Of a stretch of DNA of 64,000 bases, positions 44,401 to 51,600 are shown piece after piece. Positions within the stretch are counted from its first letter, which is position 1. Every line of letters begins with the position of its first letter. Both the position numbers and the translations under genes were made by a program. The notes under the pieces were generated by a model. That model was not told the origin of the DNA. It saw only the letters and a list, made by a program, of their open reading frames with translations, and did not search any database. The DNA comes from Haplodiscus bocki (taxonomy: Eukaryota): assembly GCA_965655095.1 (NCBI GenBank), contig OZ296649.1, forward strand, positions 94,240,001-94,304,000, read 5' to 3'.

Positions 44401-46136
44401 CGTTCAAATTCTTTGACGACCTTTCATCAGTTGTCATTGGTCCAAGGGTGCATCAACACTTCTTAAAAAGTCGCTCAAAACTGTAGATGACATTGCCGAT
44501 TCTTTTTGGCTGCCAAAAACATTGGCTGCCGGAGAACTAACGAAAGAAGGATTGAGAAACGATACTTTCTCAGAGAGTAGGTTGTATTTTTTTAGCACCG
44601 TTCTCTGTTCTTACTGTTTCGATTGTGTACTGAAACTACTTGATCAAAAACACAAATAAATAGAGATTTTTGATGATTTGCCATAAAAGTTCGGCTTTTT
44701 TAAGGTTTTTTGGTTCAGTTTTAGCAAAAATGTTTTCGGAAACCTAATGAATTTCAAGACCAACCATCTTTTTCACTTTCGGGAACCACTCTTTGGTGCG
44801 CAGAAAGCAAACCGAAGAAGTTTTGTTCAATATACCTTATCATCCATGTTTTGTGATGGTTTTATGCAGACCAAAATTGAACCTATTCAAGTTTTTACAA
44901 AGACAAAATTTCTCGCTAGCTAGTTTTTTCTTCCGAAAACAAAAACAATGAAGCACAGCATGTATTTCAACTTTCAAAGCCAACAAAAGGACGCATGTTT
45001 TTTTCGCAGGCATCACCGGTTGTCAGGGGTTCGAAGAAGCTGCACAGCGTTCACAAATTCTACAAAATTTGACGCAGTCGTCTTTTTTTACCTGGAACCT
45101 TTTCGGTAAAGCAAAGTTCCGGTAATTAGAGGACATTTTTTGCTATAGATCGTTTTATTCCTATTCTGAAGGGCAGTTTTCTAAGTGGAGTTAAAACGTG
45201 CTACAATTAGTGAAATCTCCCAAGCTTAAAGGTTTTCCCTTGAAACACTGGCCTATTTCCTCACCGCCAATTTTCTTCCAGAAAACCAAAAAATGGAAGC
45301 AAAGCTTGTATCTCGATTGTTGTAGCGAACAACGGGACTCATGAAGTTGTCGCCTACATCACGGTGCGTGCATGTTTTGAAACAGTTGAGCAGACCGCCT
45401 TCACAGAGGTACTGATCTTTGATTCAATCGGGTTTTTTAACTGGGATGTTTTCGATGAAGGAAAGGTTCAGTAACTAACTGAAAAATTTTTTCCTTTGTT
45501 TTTCTCTGCCTACTAGAAATGGAAAGTTTTTGAAAGTAATAAATTCTATGAAAAATAGTTGCGTCTGGACATTTTGAGGAAAAGTTTTCTTCATTAGCTT
45601 TGACATCCGATTCCAGCGAGATCATCCTTAAATACTTTTCGTAAAAACAGGCCCAAAAGAAGGGCAAGAAAAATGTCAAAAAGTTTGCCCAGACTTTTCA
45701 ACCAACATGGCTCTGTGCAGAAACTTAGAAAAATTCGATTAATTGCTTTTTGCTTCCATAAAGATCGACGCTTTTTAATCAGTTACCCAATGGTCCAATG
45801 GACCTCCTAAAAAGAAGTAGTCATCCAGGATTTTAGTCGACCGTCCCAAAAACTTTCGGCTGCCCAAAATTTCTTGTGGAAACAGTTGAGAAACACTGTT
45901 TTTTTTTTCAAAAAGCAAGTGGTTCGTTCTCTCTAGTTCTCTTTGCCTATGCTCACTGACTGATCTACAATTGCTATCAAAACGCAGAAACAAAAAGAGT
46001 CATTCCTTTCTGTAGTATGCGGAAAAGATATTCGAGACTAGGAGAATGTCAATGCACTTTTGTTGTACACCTTGGGAGATGAGAAGGATAATTAGTACGT
46101 CTAAACAAAAGTTCTGAAATTTTTTGGCCAACCTGG
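23400..46136 (+). repeat. Diverged monomeric layer of the same satellite family (full, truncated and 'W'-type monomers)
   Basis: Degenerate anchors lie at ~24323, 25964, 27088, 37810, 38873, 42631 and 44391. The tail motif GTCTG.AAA...TATGTGTG.GCTCGAAGCC and the AACATGGTTTT box recur throughout, with many indels. Confidence 0.88.
35000..44400 (+). repeat. Relic ~4.8-kb tandem duplication (about five subunits), 2 copies
   Basis: Paired landmarks are 36190/41001 (gctaactgcgttta), ~36760/41565 (cttctccaag.gcatgtttaacc), 37810/42631 and 38821/43582 (gttgaaacttttcggccaacatgg). ORFs 37681/42511 and 37650/42462 translate to related sequences. Confidence 0.8.
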
Positions 46137-46160
46137 TTTATTTGCAGGGATGTAGAATTT

Positions 46161-46231
46161 GCTGGATCCAGCCCATTCAGCTGGAAATTGGATCCAGCAG
46201 ACCGTTTGCTGGATCCAGCGCTGGATCCAGC
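46161..46231. repeat. Left subterminal cluster of the palindrome GCTGGATCCAGC (putative transposase-binding sites)
   Basis: Perfect copies at 46161-46172, 46208-46219 and 46220-46231; partial TGGATCCAGC at 46189-46198. Confidence 0.85.
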
Positions 46232-46269
46232 ATTCTCAGAAAAAAATAACAAATACGTAGAAAATGAAA

Positions 46270-47781
46270 TCAATCAACGTCAACATTACACAGCCATGTG
46301 AGTATTTGACCTTCTACATCCTCAGTTTTGGATTCCTTAGAGGCAATTTTCAATATTCGTTTAAAGTTGTACCGTATGAAGAGTTGAGTCTTTAATTTTT
46401 CTGTCTTCAGATTGGATCGGAGCCGCGTGTGTACTATCTTGTGACAAGAAAAGGCTCGCTCAACTACCGCCTCTATAACTGGCATTTCTAATATGAGATT
46501 TGCAGAGGTTTTATGAACTGGGAAATTTGAGACGTTGAGAGGAGCTTCAAGAACTTGGGTATCACAGAATTCTTCTTTTTCTTTTTCGAAATCTGCAGAA
46601 CGAGATTCGGGCAAAATGCACCGGAGCCACTGTGTCGCCTTTTGGGGGTCATTTTTGCCGTATACCGAGAGGAATACTTCTGCTTCCGGGGTTAATCCCA
46701 GAAAATCCTGGAAATAATATGTCAAATTTTCCATCAGCCGTTCAGAAAACATTTTCCATCTGTTGATAAAAATTATTTCCAGCTCACATCGTGTTTCAAC
46801 GGGAAGGGTGAATAGTGACCAATTTTGGCGAATTTCGAGAAAAGCCTGAATAACCTCATTAACAGTTGCTTTGTCAGATTGAATAATCATTATATGCTTT
46901 GCCACAACATCCAAAATTAGATGTGCATGTGAAAAAATAGCTTGGTCCTCTGTTGTCCCCAAATTGCGCTCGTGGCATTTTTTCAACGTTTCGAACTTTG
47001 AGTTCCATCGAACTTGACTATACCTGGGAACGGCGCCTTCTGTTACAAGTGAATCCACTTTTGCCCCAGCCTTTGCCACATTTTCAATTGAGCGAAAAAC
47101 ATCGGCCATGACAAGATTTAAAATATGTGCCACGCAATCACAGTTAAAAATACTTGGGAACTCACGGTTCAATAATCTCAGTGATTTTTGCATGTTGGCT
47201 GCGTTATCAGCATGGGCCCCTATGATAATTGCCTCTTTCTCTGTCAATTCATGGACTGTTCTTATGGTCATGGATAGTATATTGTCCGCAGATTTGTCTT
47301 TACAGTTTACACTGAACCAGAGGTACACACTGGATGAGGCAGAGACCATAAAACAAATATGATGCACGCCGGATATGTTGTTCGTCCAACCGTCCAACAT
47401 AATCGTGCCGAACTTCCCCCGAAGAAATTCCACTATTTGAGTTCTCCAATTGGCCGCTAGTTTACTAGCCTGATCAGTAATTTGCTGCCTTGAAATATAT
47501 TGATAAAACACCCCAGGCAAATTAAAGAAACACTGACCAACTGCAAATACAACGAGCGTTCCGTGTAATGTGATTGGCCGAGAATTCGCCGCATCAAATC
47601 CGTCTAATTTAATTCGCTTACAATGCACGCGTGAACTGAATAAACGACGCGTAACGTGAACGCTGCGTACTGCACGCATATATAAGGTAGCTTGCATAAT
47701 CCTCAGCAGTGCTGCAACCGTTGAATACAAAGTTTGGACTATTTTAGAAACACAATCTGTAATGTTGGGCATATAAATCAT
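46270..47781 (-). CDS. hAT transposase (DUF659-like RNase H core plus C-terminal hATC dimerisation domain), ~503 aa from the first ATG
   Basis: Motifs are MLDGWT (Asp1), HADNAANM (Asp2), CVAHILNL (CxxH), VRWNS (RW motif) and PVIEAVVERAFS..H..LRSNL......LFIRYN (catalytic Glu and hATC). The track's 47826 start is a TTG within the subterminal repeats; the first ATG is at 47781. The true start is uncertain. Confidence 0.93.
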   Translation of the reverse strand: MIYMPNITDCVSKIVQTLYSTVAALLRIMQATLYMRAVRSVHVTRRLFSSRVHCKRIKLDGFDAANSRPITLHGTLVVFAVGQCFFNLPGVFYQYISRQQITDQASKLAANWRTQIVEFLRGKFGTIMLDGWTNNISGVHHICFMVSASSSVYLWFSVNCKDKSADNILSMTIRTVHELTEKEAIIIGAHADNAANMQKSLRLLNREFPSIFNCDCVAHILNLVMADVFRSIENVAKAGAKVDSLVTEGAVPRYSQVRWNSKFETLKKCHERNLGTTEDQAIFSHAHLILDVVAKHIMIIQSDKATVNEVIQAFLEIRQNWSLFTLPVETRCELEIIFINRWKMFSERLMENLTYYFQDFLGLTPEAEVFLSVYGKNDPQKATQWLRCILPESRSADFEKEKEEFCDTQVLEAPLNVSNFPVHKTSANLILEMPVIEAVVERAFSCHKIVHTRLRSNLKTEKLKTQLFIRYNFKRILKIASKESKTEDVEGQILTWLCNVDVD

Positions 47782-47796
47782 AGTTTTTCTAAAAAC

Positions 47797-47875
47797 GCTG
47801 GATCCAGCATTCAGATTGCTGGACAAAATCTAGCAGTCTGCTGGATCCAGCTGTGGATCCAGTTTTGCTGGATAC
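47797..47875. repeat. Right subterminal cluster of GCTGGATCCAGC
   Basis: Perfect copies at 47797-47808 and 47840-47851. Partial copies at ~47818 (GCTGGA), 47854-47862 (TGGATCCAG) and 47867-47873 (GCTGGAT, abutting the TIR). Confidence 0.85.
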
Positions 47876-47882
47876 ATCCCTG

Positions 47883-48618
47883 TTTATTAGCCAATAGTTT
47901 TCGAAAATGTGTACACTAACTACGAATCTTATCGGTGCTTCTGGACTCAAATGCACTTCACCAAGTGCGCATTTAGCTTAATGTACCGATTAAATGCTGT
48001 TTGTTATCCCACTTCGACCGTTTTTTGACCTTCCGTTTGTGTCGGTTTTTTTCGGCCTATCAGATAAACGTCCGAAGTCTGGTTTCTCTTGTTCTGTTTT
48101 CGTAGATTTTCCAACACCTCCAAGAATTTTTCTTTTGAACGTGTATATCTCACTCCCTAGTCAACCAATTAGCCTATTTTTTCACAAGCGAAGCAACATG
48201 ACATTCAGGTGATTTTGGATTCTAAAAACGCCACAAAAATGCTTTGTTTTGACGGAAAGCGTTAATTTTTGAGTATTTGACATGCGAATCATGTACTTTG
48301 GGAAAAGTAAGTGCCTCCTCTAGATTCCATCCTCGGGAAAGTTGATGAAAATGTTAGGTAATTTCTTCCCCATGGGTGTTTCACACCACAGTTGAGTGGT
48401 CGGACGTCTCGAAAATGTGTTTTTTGGCTCAAAATTGCTCGTTTGTGTCATTAAAGTAGCGCACATTGAAGCTTCAGAACCACCAATAGGCCGTCCTGGT
48501 TCCACTTGAAAAGCCTCCTATGGTTGCAGTTTTAGAAGTAGACTTCTAATTGAACAAGTCCATGGCTACTATTCTGGCAGAAAATTTGCCCTGTTTTTAT
48601 AGACTTTTGTTCTCCAAA
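47883..48618 (+). repeat. Diverged W-type monomer interrupted by the hAT element
   Basis: Colinear with 50430-51130 (actc.aatgcacttc.ccaa; gtgtcggttttttcgg; agcgcacattgaagcttca), but visibly more diverged from the array units than they are from each other. Confidence 0.85.
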
Positions 48619-51600
48619 AGAATTTTTGCGCCGGTCTTATAAACTTGTGTTTTTCGAAATTGAAAAATTTCGAAACAGGAATTTTCCAAAACATGAAACA
48701 AGGTTTCTCTTTTCTAGGTTGATTGGCACCCTATGCCAATTGGCAGGATTCCAATTGAAAGAAAAAGAAGTTGATACTGAGAAAACCGTCTGTACAAGGC
48801 TATGTGTGTAGCTTGAAGCCGTGCGCTAAATGTCTTGACGCTTATATTATACGATTTCCTTCGCTGATTTCGTCACAACTTCAGAAAAATATTTCCTTCA
48901 TATCCCCAGTTCGCCGAAACTAACGGGTGGTATGCGTACAGTTTTTTTAGACCTAGAGGCAAGAAAAAGATAATAACTTAGTTGAAAAATTTTTCCCGCT
49001 AAATTTGGCCAACATGCTTTTTTCAGCCGAAACAATTCGAAATATCGTAAGCAGCCCACTGATTTTATGAAACTTGACGCCTCCTTACTAAGTACCGTTG
49101 GTTCAGCGGTCTTTCAAAGTAAATTAGGAAGTCGCCAAAGAGCGTAGTTGACAATGCCGAAGTTTCATTGCTGCAAGAACACTTGTGGCTTAAAGAAAAC
49201 TGGCCGAAGTTTTCAGAATCGATACTCTTTCAGAGTGCAAAATGTAGTTTTTTTAACCGTTTTCTCTCTTTTTTTATTTAAAAGGTCTACTGAACCCTTG
49301 TAACCCTTGCAAAGTCAAAAATTGGATCAAAGGAAAGTTATTACTTTTTCCGTTGAGTTTTGGTGTTTTTTTTGGAAAGTTTATGAATTTCAAGACTATC
49401 CAAAATTATAACTTTCAAAAACTAAACTTCGGCGCCACAAAAGCAGTTTGAACACGTCCTATTTAGACCAACTTTACACCCATGACTTCTAGAAGGGCTT
49501 TACACTGCGAAATCAAACATTTTCAAGTTCTGAAGTGAGCGAATTTTTCAACCATATCTATTTTCTTCCAGAAAACCAAAGAATTGAAGCAAAGCTTGTA
49601 TCTCGATTGTTGCAGCGAATAAAAAGACTCATGGAGTTGTCGCGTACATCACGGGCAGTGTGAGTTTTGGAACAGTTGCACAGACCGCGTTTACATCCGT
49701 ATAGAATTTTGATTCAATCGGGTCTTTTTAACTGGGATGTTTTCGATAAAGAAAAATTCAGTGAGTAACTGATGAACATTTGGTTAGTTTTTCGCTTCCT
49801 ATTACAAATTACAAGTATCTGATGGTGGTAAAAGTGTATAGAAAAAGTTGCGTCTGGAAACTATTAAGTGTGTGTCTCTAAGTTATTCGCTATGTTTCTT
49901 GGTGCCCATGTTTTCTTTCTGATTTTCTTACCAGGTTTCGAATGTTTTTCCAAGATATACCAAGGCAGAGATTTTTCGCCGGCTCATTTTTCAAGAAACA
50001 AATTTTGGAGCATAGCAGGTTTATCAACCGTCAAAACTAACAACAGAACCCATGGCTTTGTCGCGGGAATCACAGGCTGTGAGAGTTTCAAATCAGTTAC
50101 ACAGCCTTTACATGTTTATAAAAAAAATCTGATTCCCCAGTGCTTTGTTTCCTAGCATCTTTTCGTTGAAGGAAAGTTTCAGTAACTAAAGGAGTTTTTT
50201 GGCATTCTTTTTCTCTTTCTACTGCTAATGGCAGTTTTCTCACGCTAGTAAACCTCTGGAACAATTAGTGGCGGAGAAACAAAAAAGATTCATACCATTT
50301 TGTAATATGCCAAAAAATTTACTCGAGACACGGAGAATGTCAGTGCGTTTTCGTTGCTCACCTAGGGAGAAGACAGGGGTTACTCGACTACCTGTACAAA
50401 AATTCTGATTTTTTGGCCCACCTTGTTGATTAGCCAATAACTTTCAAAATTGTGTTCACTTAAGAATATTATCGAGGCTTTTGAACTCAGATGCACTTCT
50501 CCAAAAGTGTCTTTAGCTTGCTGTACCGAAATATTGCTGTTTGGTATCCCACTTTGACCATTTTTTGACCTTATTTTTGTGTCGGTTTTTTTCGGTCTAT
50601 CACAAAAGGTCCAATGTCTGATTCATGTTGTTCTGATTCCGCCATTTTTTCCACAACTCCCGGAAGTTTTCCTTGAACATCTATGTCTCACATCCTATTT
50701 AATAAAACCATCTAATAAATTCACAAGCAATGCGGCATGACTTCAAGGTATTTTTTGACTCTAGAAACTGCACCACAAAAATTTTTTGACGGAGGACTTT
50801 TCTTTTCCTAGTATGTGACATGCGAATCAGGTAGCTTGCAGGTATGTAAGTGCTTCCTCACTATAATAGCCTTGCCCAATTTGATTGAAAAATATTGTCT
50901 CATTTCTTGCCCATGGGTATTTTACGCTTCGGTTGAATGGCCGGACACCTCGAAAAGGTGCTATTTTGGCTCAAAAACACTCTTTTTTTGTAACCTTAAA
51001 ATAGCGCACATTGAGGCTTCAAAACAAGCAACAGTCCGTTCTGATTTTCCCTGAAAAGCCTCTTGTGGTAGCAGTTCTGGAAAATAGACTTCCTATTGAA
51101 CAAGCCAATGGTTACTATTCTGGCAGAATTGTTGCGCTGGTCTTATAAACTTGTGTTTTTCAAAATTGAAAAATTTCGAAACAGGAATTTCCAAAACATG
51201 AAACAAGGTTTCTCTTTTCTAGGTTGATTGGCACCCTATGCCAATTGGCAGGATTCCAATTGAAAGAAAAAGAAGTTGATACTGAGAAAACCGTCTGTAC
51301 AAGGCAATGTGTGTAGCTTGAACCCGTGGGCTAAATGTCTTGACGCTTATATTTTACGATTTCCTTCGCTGATTTCGTCACAACTTCAGAAAAATATTTC
51401 CTTCATATCCCCAGTTCGCCGAAACTAACGGGTGGTATGCGTACAGTTTTTTTAGACCTAGAGGCAAGAAAAAGATAATAACTTAGTTGAAAAATTTTTC
51501 CCGCTAAATTTGGCCAACATGCTTTTTTCAGCCGAAACAATTCGAAATATCGTAAGCAGCCCACTGATTTTATGAAACTTGACGCCTCCTTACTAAGTAC

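What the first reader, a model, noticed from the sequence alone, without database searches (positions are those of the whole stretch)
46145..47882. Very compact hAT transposon with intact catalytic motifs but no BED zinc finger
Seen: the element is 1,738 bp and ~87% is one uninterrupted intronless ORF. D, D, E, CxxH and RW motifs are all present. The N-terminus has no CxxC...H..H pattern, and the other two minus frames stop early. The CxxH-to-RW spacing is only ~35-40 aa. Established: characterised autonomous hATs (Hermes ~2.7 kb, hobo ~3 kb, Ac and Tol2 ~4.6 kb) encode ~600-800-aa transposases with an N-terminal BED domain that binds subterminal repeats. Inference: either a minimal hAT lineage, of possible interest as a small vector, or an in-frame deletion derivative mobilised in trans.
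Basis: partly seen in the sequence, partly recalled or inferred. Interest (0 to 1): 0.7.

Follow-up and report, generated by a model that had tools for sequence, protein, structure and literature searches.

The report
Deletion-derived hAT transposon copy, BED finger lost
The 1.7-kb element is a real hAT transposon, but it is small and lacks a BED finger only because this one old, decaying copy lost 375 bp that every longer sister copy in the genome still has, so it is an ordinary defective copy, not a minimal lineage.

Summary
Window 46145-47882 is a 1,738-bp hAT element with 10-bp TIRs (CAGGGATGTA), an 8-bp TSD (7/8) and palindromic GCTGGATCCAGC subterminal repeats. It carries one minus-strand ORF (87% of the element from the first ATG) with the D, D, CxxH, RW and E motifs and no zinc finger.

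All 14 other loci in this genome that span this point (92-94% identical) carry about 375 extra bp at window 47489-47493, and complete copies are about 2,113 bp. That segment holds the start codon, a CxxC...H....H BED finger and the first conserved helices of the transposase. It is collinear with a sister family whose finger passes Pfam zf-BED.

The deletion is exactly 125 codons. It lies between short imperfect direct repeats, and its junction is unique in the genome. Substitutions in this copy look neutral (13 synonymous, 29 non-synonymous). It is therefore a single-copy, Ds-like, in-frame deletion derivative of an old family (mean pairwise divergence 8.6%).

Side finding: the same genome holds a young sister family of only 1,863 bp. 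It has at least 10 full copies at 97-100% identity, at least 3 of them with intact 512-aa BED-containing transposase frames. That family is the real compact hAT candidate.

The parts
46137..46144 (.). Left target-site duplication, tttatttg
   Evidence: It matches 47883-47890 (tttattag) at 7 of 8 positions. Ten of the 12 family copies with both ends mapped have perfect 8-bp TSDs.
46145..46154 (+). Terminal inverted repeat CAGGGATGTA, the 3' end in the transposase orientation
   Evidence: It is the perfect 10-bp inverse of 47873-47882. The same terminus is present in the other copies, with single-base changes in a few.
46155..46269 (.). 3' subterminal region with palindromic GCTGGATCCAGC repeats at 46161, 46208 and 46220
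   Evidence: Analogous GCTG....CAGC palindromes sit at the ends of sister family B and of relatives L038 and L039. A role as transposase-binding sites is inferred, not tested.
46270..47826 (-). Open reading frame of 518 codons from TTG (first ATGs at codons 16 and 19). It joins about 110 residues read from the 5' leader to transposase residues ~115-522.
   Evidence: Pfam: DUF659 at 37.9 bits and Dimer_Tnp_hAT at 20.3 bits. The ORF is 86% identical to residues 115-522 of the intact copy's protein P0001.
47489..47493 (.). Deletion junction. About 375 bp present in all other long copies are missing here.
   Evidence: Other copies align to element positions 1-1345 and 1349-1738 with 372-378 bp in between. 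An 81-bp probe across the junction matches in full only here. Short imperfect direct repeats (TATTTTGCGG / GTATTCGCGG) flank the lost piece in full copies.
47380..47400 (-). MLDGWTN, carrying the first catalytic Asp
   Evidence: D-G-W is invariant in alignments A2 and A3.
47191..47211 (-). ADNAANM, carrying the second catalytic Asp
   Evidence: D-N is invariant in A2 and A3.
47113..47136 (-). CVAHILNL, the CxxH motif
   Evidence: C, A and H are invariant in A2 and A3.
46999..47013 (-). VRWNS, the RW motif
   Evidence: R-W-N is invariant in A2 and A3.
46447..46464 (-). VERAFS, carrying the catalytic Glu inside the hAT C-terminal region
   Evidence: The E is nearly invariant in A2 and A3. The Pfam Dimer_Tnp_hAT stretch covers residues 431-487.
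47784..47872 (.). 5' subterminal region with GCTGGATCCAGC repeats at 47797 and 47840, plus degenerate copies
47873..47882 (-). Terminal inverted repeat, the 5' end in the transposase orientation
47883..47890 (.). Right target-site duplication, tttattag

Best explanation
The element is one copy of an old hAT DNA-transposon family, called family A here. Complete family A elements are about 2,113 bp and encode a 522-aa transposase with an N-terminal BED zinc finger, a DUF659-type RNase-H-like DDE core with an all-alpha insertion domain, and a hAT C-terminal region.

This copy lost 375 bp (125 codons) between two short imperfect direct repeats. A deletion of this kind fits abortive gap repair or replication slippage, but the mechanism is inferred.

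The lost piece held the native ATG, the BED finger, the linker and the first conserved helices after it (transposase residues 1 to ~118). The 5' leader of this family happens to be open in phase, so the deletion fused leader and catalytic core into one long ORF. That fusion is why the copy looks like a complete, BED-less mini-transposase.

Both termini and the subterminal repeats are kept. In principle a full-length copy's transposase could move it, as Ac moves Ds. That is inferred, not shown.

The encoded protein lacks the end-recognition domain and evolves neutrally. The copy is a non-autonomous, decaying relic.
For: 1. All 14 other loci that span the point carry 372-378 extra bp at element position 1345/1349. 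The loss is 375 nt in four of the six copies aligned there and 372 nt in the other two.
2. In the one intact copy, L007 (protein P0001, 522 aa), the extra piece reads MPAV..DHF..CKLC..(18)..H....H. It matches positions 5-44 of the 44-position Pfam zf-BED profile, though weakly (E 0.05, 14.1 bits).
3. P0001 is collinear from residue 1 with the sister-family B protein (38% identity, E 2e-116). The family B finger passes the zf-BED gathering score (22.4 and 26.7 bits against 20.6).
4. Outside relatives start with the same W/F..CxxC..H..C finger. Two of them carry PF02892 in the precomputed annotation.
5. A model of P0001 (mean pLDDT 71, core 85-94) has a strand-strand-strand-helix N-terminus. Its best structural match is the Hermes transposase (E 5e-11, probability 1.0, TM about 0.5).
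6. The window protein matches P0001 only from residue 115. Its DUF659 match starts at profile position 32, against position 19 in P0001.
7. The junction is unique in the genome.
8. The window copy sits inside the family by divergence: K2P 0.059-0.104 to the others, and 3.9% from the majority state.
9. Its differences from the majority are spread evenly over codon positions (16, 12 and 15). They split 13 synonymous to 29 non-synonymous, against a random expectation of 22% to 74%.
10. Many other copies carry different internal deletions, as is usual for hAT families.
Against: The deletion is exactly in frame and the ORF is still open after about 4% divergence. That could hint at selection. However, one other copy (L007) of the 9 long copies compared is also fully open, and the substitution pattern is neutral.

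The family A finger itself scores below Pfam's zf-BED cut-off. Calling it BED rests on pattern, collinear homology and predicted secondary structure.

The short-read contigs that were listed do not span the junction. The only assembly support is a contig-level record that is 100% identical over 4.5 kb and may derive from the same data.
Confidence: 0.93

Rival explanations
1. It is a naturally minimal, autonomous hAT lineage that works without a BED finger.
For: The ORF is intact, all catalytic motifs are present, and the TIRs, subterminal repeats and TSD are intact.
Against: It is the only copy with this structure. All 14 other loci that span the point have the finger-bearing segment. That segment is homologous to the N-termini of sister families and distant relatives, so it is ancestral. 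The deletion also removes conserved helices beyond the finger. Substitutions are neutral.
Confidence: 0.02
2. The truncated protein is kept because it does something useful, such as acting as a trans-dominant inhibitor of the family's transposase or as a domesticated host protein.
For: The loss is in frame and leaves a long open frame of 503 codons from an ATG. The dimerisation region is retained. From general knowledge, truncated transposases act as repressors in other systems, for example the P element KP protein.
Against: It is a single copy. The synonymous to non-synonymous split is as expected for neutral change. No run on record as RNA holds the sequence. The first ~110 residues come from a leader with no recognisable protein features. 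The family is old and mostly broken, so there is little left to repress.
Confidence: 0.03
3. The 375-bp deletion is an assembly artefact, and the real locus holds a full-length copy.
For: The element is a multi-copy repeat. The short-read contigs collapse across copies, and none of those listed spans the junction.
Against: The same sequence, 100% identical over 4.5 kb including both flanks, is in a 358-kb contig whose record name ends '66.69x', apparently a coverage figure. Copy-specific substitutions run on both sides of the junction. Microhomology at the breakpoints is typical of real deletions.
Confidence: 0.02

Closest known systems
Ac/Ds-type relation within a hAT family: autonomous element and internal-deletion derivative
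   Same: Both termini and the subterminal repeats are kept. There is an internal deletion relative to full-length copies. Many sister copies carry other internal deletions.
   Different: The deletion happens to keep a long open frame, so the copy mimics a complete gene. There is no sign that this derivative was ever amplified. Nearly all candidate partner elements in the family are themselves broken.
Hermes transposase (Musca domestica hAT; PDB 2BW3, 4D1Q, 8EDG)
   Same: Hermes is the best structural match of the family's intact protein (E 5e-11, TM about 0.5). It shares the N-terminal BED finger, the RNase-H-like DDE core split by an all-alpha insertion domain, the CxxH and RW motifs, and 8-bp TSDs.
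   Different: There is no detectable sequence match to any PDB chain, and identity in the structural alignment is about 15%. The protein is 522 aa against 612 for Hermes, and the element is 2.1 kb against about 2.7 kb (Hermes sizes from general knowledge). The window copy additionally lacks the finger and the helices that follow it.
DUF659-type (PF04937) hAT transposases of animals: the P0007 clade in sponge, Hydra, frogs, reptiles and insects
   Same: The Pfam architecture is the same (BED finger, DUF659, Dimer_Tnp_hAT) and so are the invariant motifs. PMC3985635 places DUF659 among hAT RNase-H-like transposases.
   Different: Identity is only 20-27%. Families A and B have about 13 fewer residues between CxxH and RW, about 10 fewer just after RW, and shorter linkers. 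The hAT subgroup (Ac, Buster or Tip) was not determined.
Sister family B in the same genome (e.g. L032:1352-3214)
   Same: It has the same TIR start (CAGGGATG), 8-bp TSDs, palindromic subterminal repeats and a collinear protein at 38% identity.
   Different: It is 1,863 bp with only a 149-nt leader. Copies are 97-100% identical, and at least 3 have intact 512-aa frames that include a zf-BED above Pfam's cut-off. It is young and possibly active, whereas family A is old and decayed.

Membership tests
hAT superfamily transposon | 8-bp target-site duplication | tested here: met
   The window copy matches at 7 of 8 positions. Ten of the 12 family copies with both ends mapped are perfect.
hAT superfamily transposon | Short terminal inverted repeats starting CAG/TAG | tested here: met
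   CAGGGATGTA / TACATCCCTG, 10 bp and perfect.
hAT superfamily transposon | DDE RNase-H-like core with an insertion domain, plus CxxH and RW motifs | tested here: met
   DUF659 is above its cut-off. The motifs fall on invariant alignment columns. The Hermes fold match was obtained for the intact family protein.
hAT superfamily transposon | C-terminal hAT dimerisation region (PF05699) | tested here: inconclusive
   The window copy scores 20.3 bits against a cut-off of 21.4. The intact family copy scores 26.0 bits and passes.
Autonomous hAT element | Complete transposase including the N-terminal DNA-binding (BED) domain and its own start codon | tested here: not met
   The finger, the native ATG and residues 1 to ~118 are deleted in the window copy. 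No CxxC occurs in the first 130 residues.
Autonomous hAT element | Evidence of selection or recent activity of this form | tested here: not met
   The junction is unique, the substitution pattern is neutral, and the copy is 3.9% diverged from the majority state.
Non-autonomous internal-deletion derivative (Ds-like) | Both ends retained, with an internal segment missing relative to full-length family members | tested here: met
Non-autonomous internal-deletion derivative (Ds-like) | Mobilised in trans by the family's transposase | not testable with these tools
   This needs an excision or integration assay. The single copy gives no genomic evidence either way.
BED zinc finger (PF02892) in the deleted segment | Cx2CxnHx3-5[H/C] with an upstream aromatic residue, and a match to the Pfam profile | tested here: inconclusive
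   Family A has the pattern, but scores 14.1 bits against a cut-off of 20.6. The collinear family B finger scores 22.4 and 26.7 bits and passes. The model shows three strands and a helix at pLDDT 70-82.

The most novel reading that the evidence does not exclude
The window copy itself is ordinary, but it points to an undescribed lineage of unusually compact hAT elements. The lineage comprises families A, B and C here, plus relatives P0132 and P0134 on roughly 2.1-2.4-kb contigs elsewhere. Its features are 500-520-aa BED-bearing transposases, shortened loops around the RW motif, and 12-bp GCTG....CAGC palindromic subterminal repeats.

The 1,863-bp family B has at least 10 near-identical full copies, at least 3 intact frames and many deletion derivatives. 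It may be a currently active autonomous hAT smaller than any characterised one that I can recall.
Probability: 0.4. Interest if true: 0.45.

Novelty: new member of a known kind. Interest (0 to 1): 0.2.

Why it matters
This finding matters little in itself. It is a defective copy of a decaying DNA transposon, and its compactness and missing finger are products of one deletion.

It is a useful caution. A long intact ORF with every catalytic motif does not make an element autonomous, and comparing copies within the genome settles the question at once.

The by-product is more useful. A 1.86-kb hAT family with intact BED-containing transposase frames and near-identical copies would be a reasonable candidate if someone wanted a small hAT for transposition assays or vector work.

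Tried and rejected
- A sequence search of the intact family protein against PDB found no meaningful hit, best E 0.19 to a ribosomal protein. Only the fold search found Hermes.
- Pfam zf-BED did not appear in the whole-protein scan of P0001 at E <= 1. It appeared only weakly on the 70-aa piece.
- Word-based protein searches gave few relatives for families A and B. The wider hAT clade was reached only through P0007.
- Family scans had already placed the protein, and the claim does not rest on an absence of relatives.
- Sequencing runs: none of the five holders is on record as RNA (four have no kind recorded, one is DNA?), all kept as contigs. The laid contigs confirm both flank-to-element boundaries in sample S1 with no mismatches. 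They collapse inside the repeat, and none of those listed spans the junction. Expression and population status therefore stay open.
- The in-phase open leader was tested as a possible N-terminal domain. It has no Pfam hit, no relatives outside the family in this genome, and low language-model recognition with no usable hit. It remains unexplained.
- My first try at the leader query used the wrong strand and was corrected.
- A literature search for a 'smallest autonomous hAT' gave nothing usable. Size comparisons with Hermes, hobo, Ac and Tol2 rest on general knowledge.
- A search for the CAGGGATG terminus in the outside relatives found no exact TIR. Related ends and palindromic subterminal repeats were seen instead.
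- Majority states were used only inside scripts to classify substitutions.
Full report
**1. What is at the coordinates**

Window 46145-47882 is a 1,738-bp element. It is bounded by a perfect 10-bp inverted repeat (CAGGGATGTA ... TACATCCCTG) and flanked by tttatttg / tttattag, an 8-bp duplication matching at 7 of 8 positions. Inside each end lie copies of the 12-bp palindrome GCTGGATCCAGC, three on the left and two exact plus degenerate ones on the right.

The minus strand carries the only ORF of 180 aa or more in the whole 64-kb window. It runs 46270-47826, which is 518 codons from a TTG.

Pfam finds DUF659 (PF04937, 37.9 bits, above cut-off) and the hAT C-terminal dimerisation region (20.3 bits, just under the 21.4 cut-off). 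DUF659 is the RNase-H-like core of a subset of hAT transposases (PMC3985635).

The DGW, DNA, CxxH, RW and E motifs are all present. They fall on invariant or nearly invariant columns of an alignment with 29-31 hAT transposases. No CxxC occurs in the first 130 residues.

**2. The other copies in the genome decide the interpretation**

A DNA search of the window's own 1.5-Gb genome found 18 related loci. All 14 other loci that span the relevant point align to element positions 1-1345 and 1349-1738 with 372-378 extra bp in between. Complete copies are about 2,113 bp. Multiple alignment places the gap at window 47489-47493. The loss is 375 nt in four of the six copies aligned there and 372 nt in the other two.

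In the full copies the lost piece is flanked by short imperfect direct repeats, TATTTTGCGG and GTATTCGCGG. An 81-bp probe across the window's junction matches end to end only at the window. Every other copy matches only one half.

**3. What the lost piece encodes**

One copy, L007 (G000 C10:57221228-57222793), still has an intact frame. From its only in-frame ATG it gives a 522-aa protein, P0001. The protein begins MPAVVDHF...CKLC, then 18 residues, then H, four residues, H.

That stretch matches positions 5-44 of the 44-position Pfam zf-BED profile. The match is weak (E 0.05, 14.1 bits against a 20.6 cut-off). The call is strengthened in three ways.

- P0001 is collinear from residue 1 with the transposase of a sister family in the same genome (38% identity, E 2e-116). 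That protein's finger passes the zf-BED gathering score, with 22.4 bits in the whole protein and 26.7 on the 70-aa piece.
- Outside relatives start with the same aromatic...CxxC...H...C finger, on which P0001's CKLC and H41 align. Two of them carry PF02892 in the precomputed annotation.
- An AlphaFold model of P0001 shows three short strands and a helix for residues 8-45 at pLDDT 70-82.

Overall the model has mean pLDDT 71, pTM 0.66 and a core at 85-94. Its best PDB matches are all Hermes transposase entries (4D1Q, 8EDG, 8SJD, 2BW3; E 5e-11 to 1e-8, probability 1.0, TM about 0.5).

The window protein matches P0001 only from residue 115. Its DUF659 match starts at profile position 32, against position 19 in P0001. 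So the deletion removed four things: the native start codon, the finger, the linker, and the conserved helix that carries the ...PF.IVEDE.F motif shared with all relatives. Because that segment is homologous to the N-termini of sister families and distant relatives, it is ancestral. The window copy is a deletion, and the others are not insertions.

**4. Why the copy still looks like a complete gene**

In family A the roughly 420 nt between the 5' TIR and the MPAV start codon are free of stops in the transposase phase in several copies. L004 and L006 have no stops. L003, L005 and the window have one. The other two frames have 4-7. Removing exactly 125 codons therefore fused this leader to the catalytic core and produced one long frame. 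The first ~110 residues of the window ORF are leader-derived.

The leader's openness is itself odd. Only 2-4 of 5,000 dinucleotide shuffles are stop-free in that frame. Yet it has no Pfam match, no relatives outside the family in this genome and low language-model recognition.

Family B has only a 149-nt leader, closed by a stop just upstream of its ORF. The outside relatives whose N-terminus is complete, and families A and B, begin at or a few residues before the finger. I take MPAV as the real start and leave the open leader as unexplained. A lineage-specific N-terminal extension of 105-139 aa cannot be excluded.

**5. Age and selection**

Family A copies differ by a mean K2P distance of 0.086, and each lies 2-6% from the majority state. 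The window copy is at 3.9% and sits inside the family, closest to L004 and L002.

Differences from the majority are spread evenly over codon positions in every copy. In the window copy they number 16, 12 and 15, with 13 synonymous and 29 non-synonymous. Random change would give 22% synonymous, 74% non-synonymous and 4% stops. This is neutral decay after insertion, with no sign of domestication.

Of the 9 long copies compared, two keep a fully open frame (L007 and the window), and the rest have breaks. Other loci carry different internal deletions, for example 608-1252, 643-961, 561-789, 523-843 and 458-1499. That is the usual picture of a hAT family with Ds-like derivatives.

**6. Most likely history and mechanism**

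Shown:
- It is a hAT element that inserted by cut-and-paste, as the TSD and TIRs indicate.
- It differs from its family by one internal, in-frame, microhomology-flanked deletion.
- It exists once in the genome.
- It is drifting neutrally.

Inferred:
- The deletion arose by abortive gap repair or slippage.
- The GCTGGATCCAGC palindromes are the sites bound by the finger.
- The copy cannot supply end recognition because it lacks the finger. With intact ends it could be moved only by a full-length copy's transposase.
- Whether the deletion came before or after insertion here cannot be told.

**7. Support from reads and other assemblies**

None of the five public runs that hold the sequence is on record as RNA (four have no recorded kind, one is listed as DNA?), and all are kept as contigs. 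Contigs from sample S1 bridge both flank-to-element boundaries without mismatch. They collapse inside the repeat, and none of those listed spans the junction.

A contig-level assembly record (358 kb; the record name carries '66.69x', apparently a coverage figure) is 100% identical to window 44770-49272, deletion included. It may derive from the same data, so it is not independent proof.

**8. Comparison with known systems and novelty**

The element meets the hAT criteria: 8-bp TSD, CAG-type TIRs, a DDE core with CxxH and RW, and the hAT C-terminal region (passed by the family, borderline in this copy). It fails the criteria for an autonomous element. It behaves like a Ds-type derivative.

The family is a divergent branch of the animal DUF659-type hATs, at 20-27% identity to a clade found in sponge, Hydra, frogs, reptiles and insects. 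It has no sequence-level match to any solved structure.

It is a trait of the whole lineage and not of this copy.

The pooled TSDs of families A and B show AT at positions 4-5 in 12 of 14 cases and T at position 2 in 9 of 14. I did not assign an Ac, Buster or Tip subgroup.

**9. By-product: a truly compact sister family**

A six-frame search with P0001 found a second family, B, at 38% identity and a third, C, at about 28%.

Family B elements are 1,863 bp (L032:1352-3214). Their TIRs are CAGGGATGGT ... CACATCCCTG. Three of the four copies inspected have perfect 8-bp TSDs. Their subterminal repeats are GCGGTTAACAGC / GCTGTTAACGGC-type palindromes.

At least 10 full-length copies are 97-100% identical, and there are many internal-deletion derivatives. 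At least 3 copies have uninterrupted frames. The frame encodes a 512-aa protein with zf-BED and DUF659 above Pfam's cut-offs. The Dimer_Tnp_hAT match is sub-threshold at 13.9 bits.

Relatives at 53% and 40% identity sit on 2.1- and 2.4-kb contigs from other samples. They have CAGGG-like ends and GCTGTATACAGC palindromes.

**10. Verdict**

The 'minimal lineage' reading is refuted, and the 'in-frame deletion derivative' reading is supported. The finding is ordinary. Interest is low for the finding itself and moderate for the family B by-product.

Noticed in passing
L032:1352-3214 (G000 C5:84204089-84205951); also C3:74103848-74105710, C1:71009892-71011753, C10:73384587-73386448 and others: This is sister hAT family B. 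It is 1,863 bp with 8-bp TSDs. At least 10 full copies are 97-100% identical, and there are many deletion derivatives. At least 3 copies have intact 512-aa frames with zf-BED and DUF659 above Pfam cut-offs. It is a candidate young, possibly active, very compact autonomous hAT.
   Followed up: partly
Family A copies, element nt 1 to ~420 (e.g. L004:748-1154; window 47494-47882 minus strand): The 5' leader, from the TIR to the transposase ATG, is stop-free in phase with the transposase. Only 2-4 of 5,000 dinucleotide shuffles reach this. An ATG lies inside the TIR. The leader has no homologues and no recognisable protein features. It could be a lineage-specific N-terminal extension or a coincidence.
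   Followed up: partly
L036:1255-2763 and L037 (G000 C3:113609052-113610224, C12:50984257-50985429): This is a third related hAT family, C, at about 28% identity to family A. It has intact frames of about 500 aa and a different N-terminal Cys/His pattern. The copies are about 99% identical. Element ends were not mapped.
   Followed up: no
Ends of families A and B and of outside relatives L038:1-95 and L039:2290-2378: All four elements share 12-bp palindromic subterminal repeats of the form GCTG-NNNN-CAGC: GGATCC, TTAA-type and TATA cores. This suggests a conserved half-site recognised by the lineage's BED finger.
   Followed up: no
window 1-32000: There is a sustained AT skew of about -0.12 to -0.16 (T-rich plus strand) over the first ~32 kb. 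It fades to about -0.03 to -0.08 further on. No large tandem repeats and no long ORFs are present. One possibility is a long transcribed or intronic region.
   Followed up: no
P0006 (347 aa, gene call on another family A copy): A database gene model starts in flanking DNA and reads through the TIR into the element. This shows how the open leader produces chimeric gene predictions.
   Followed up: no
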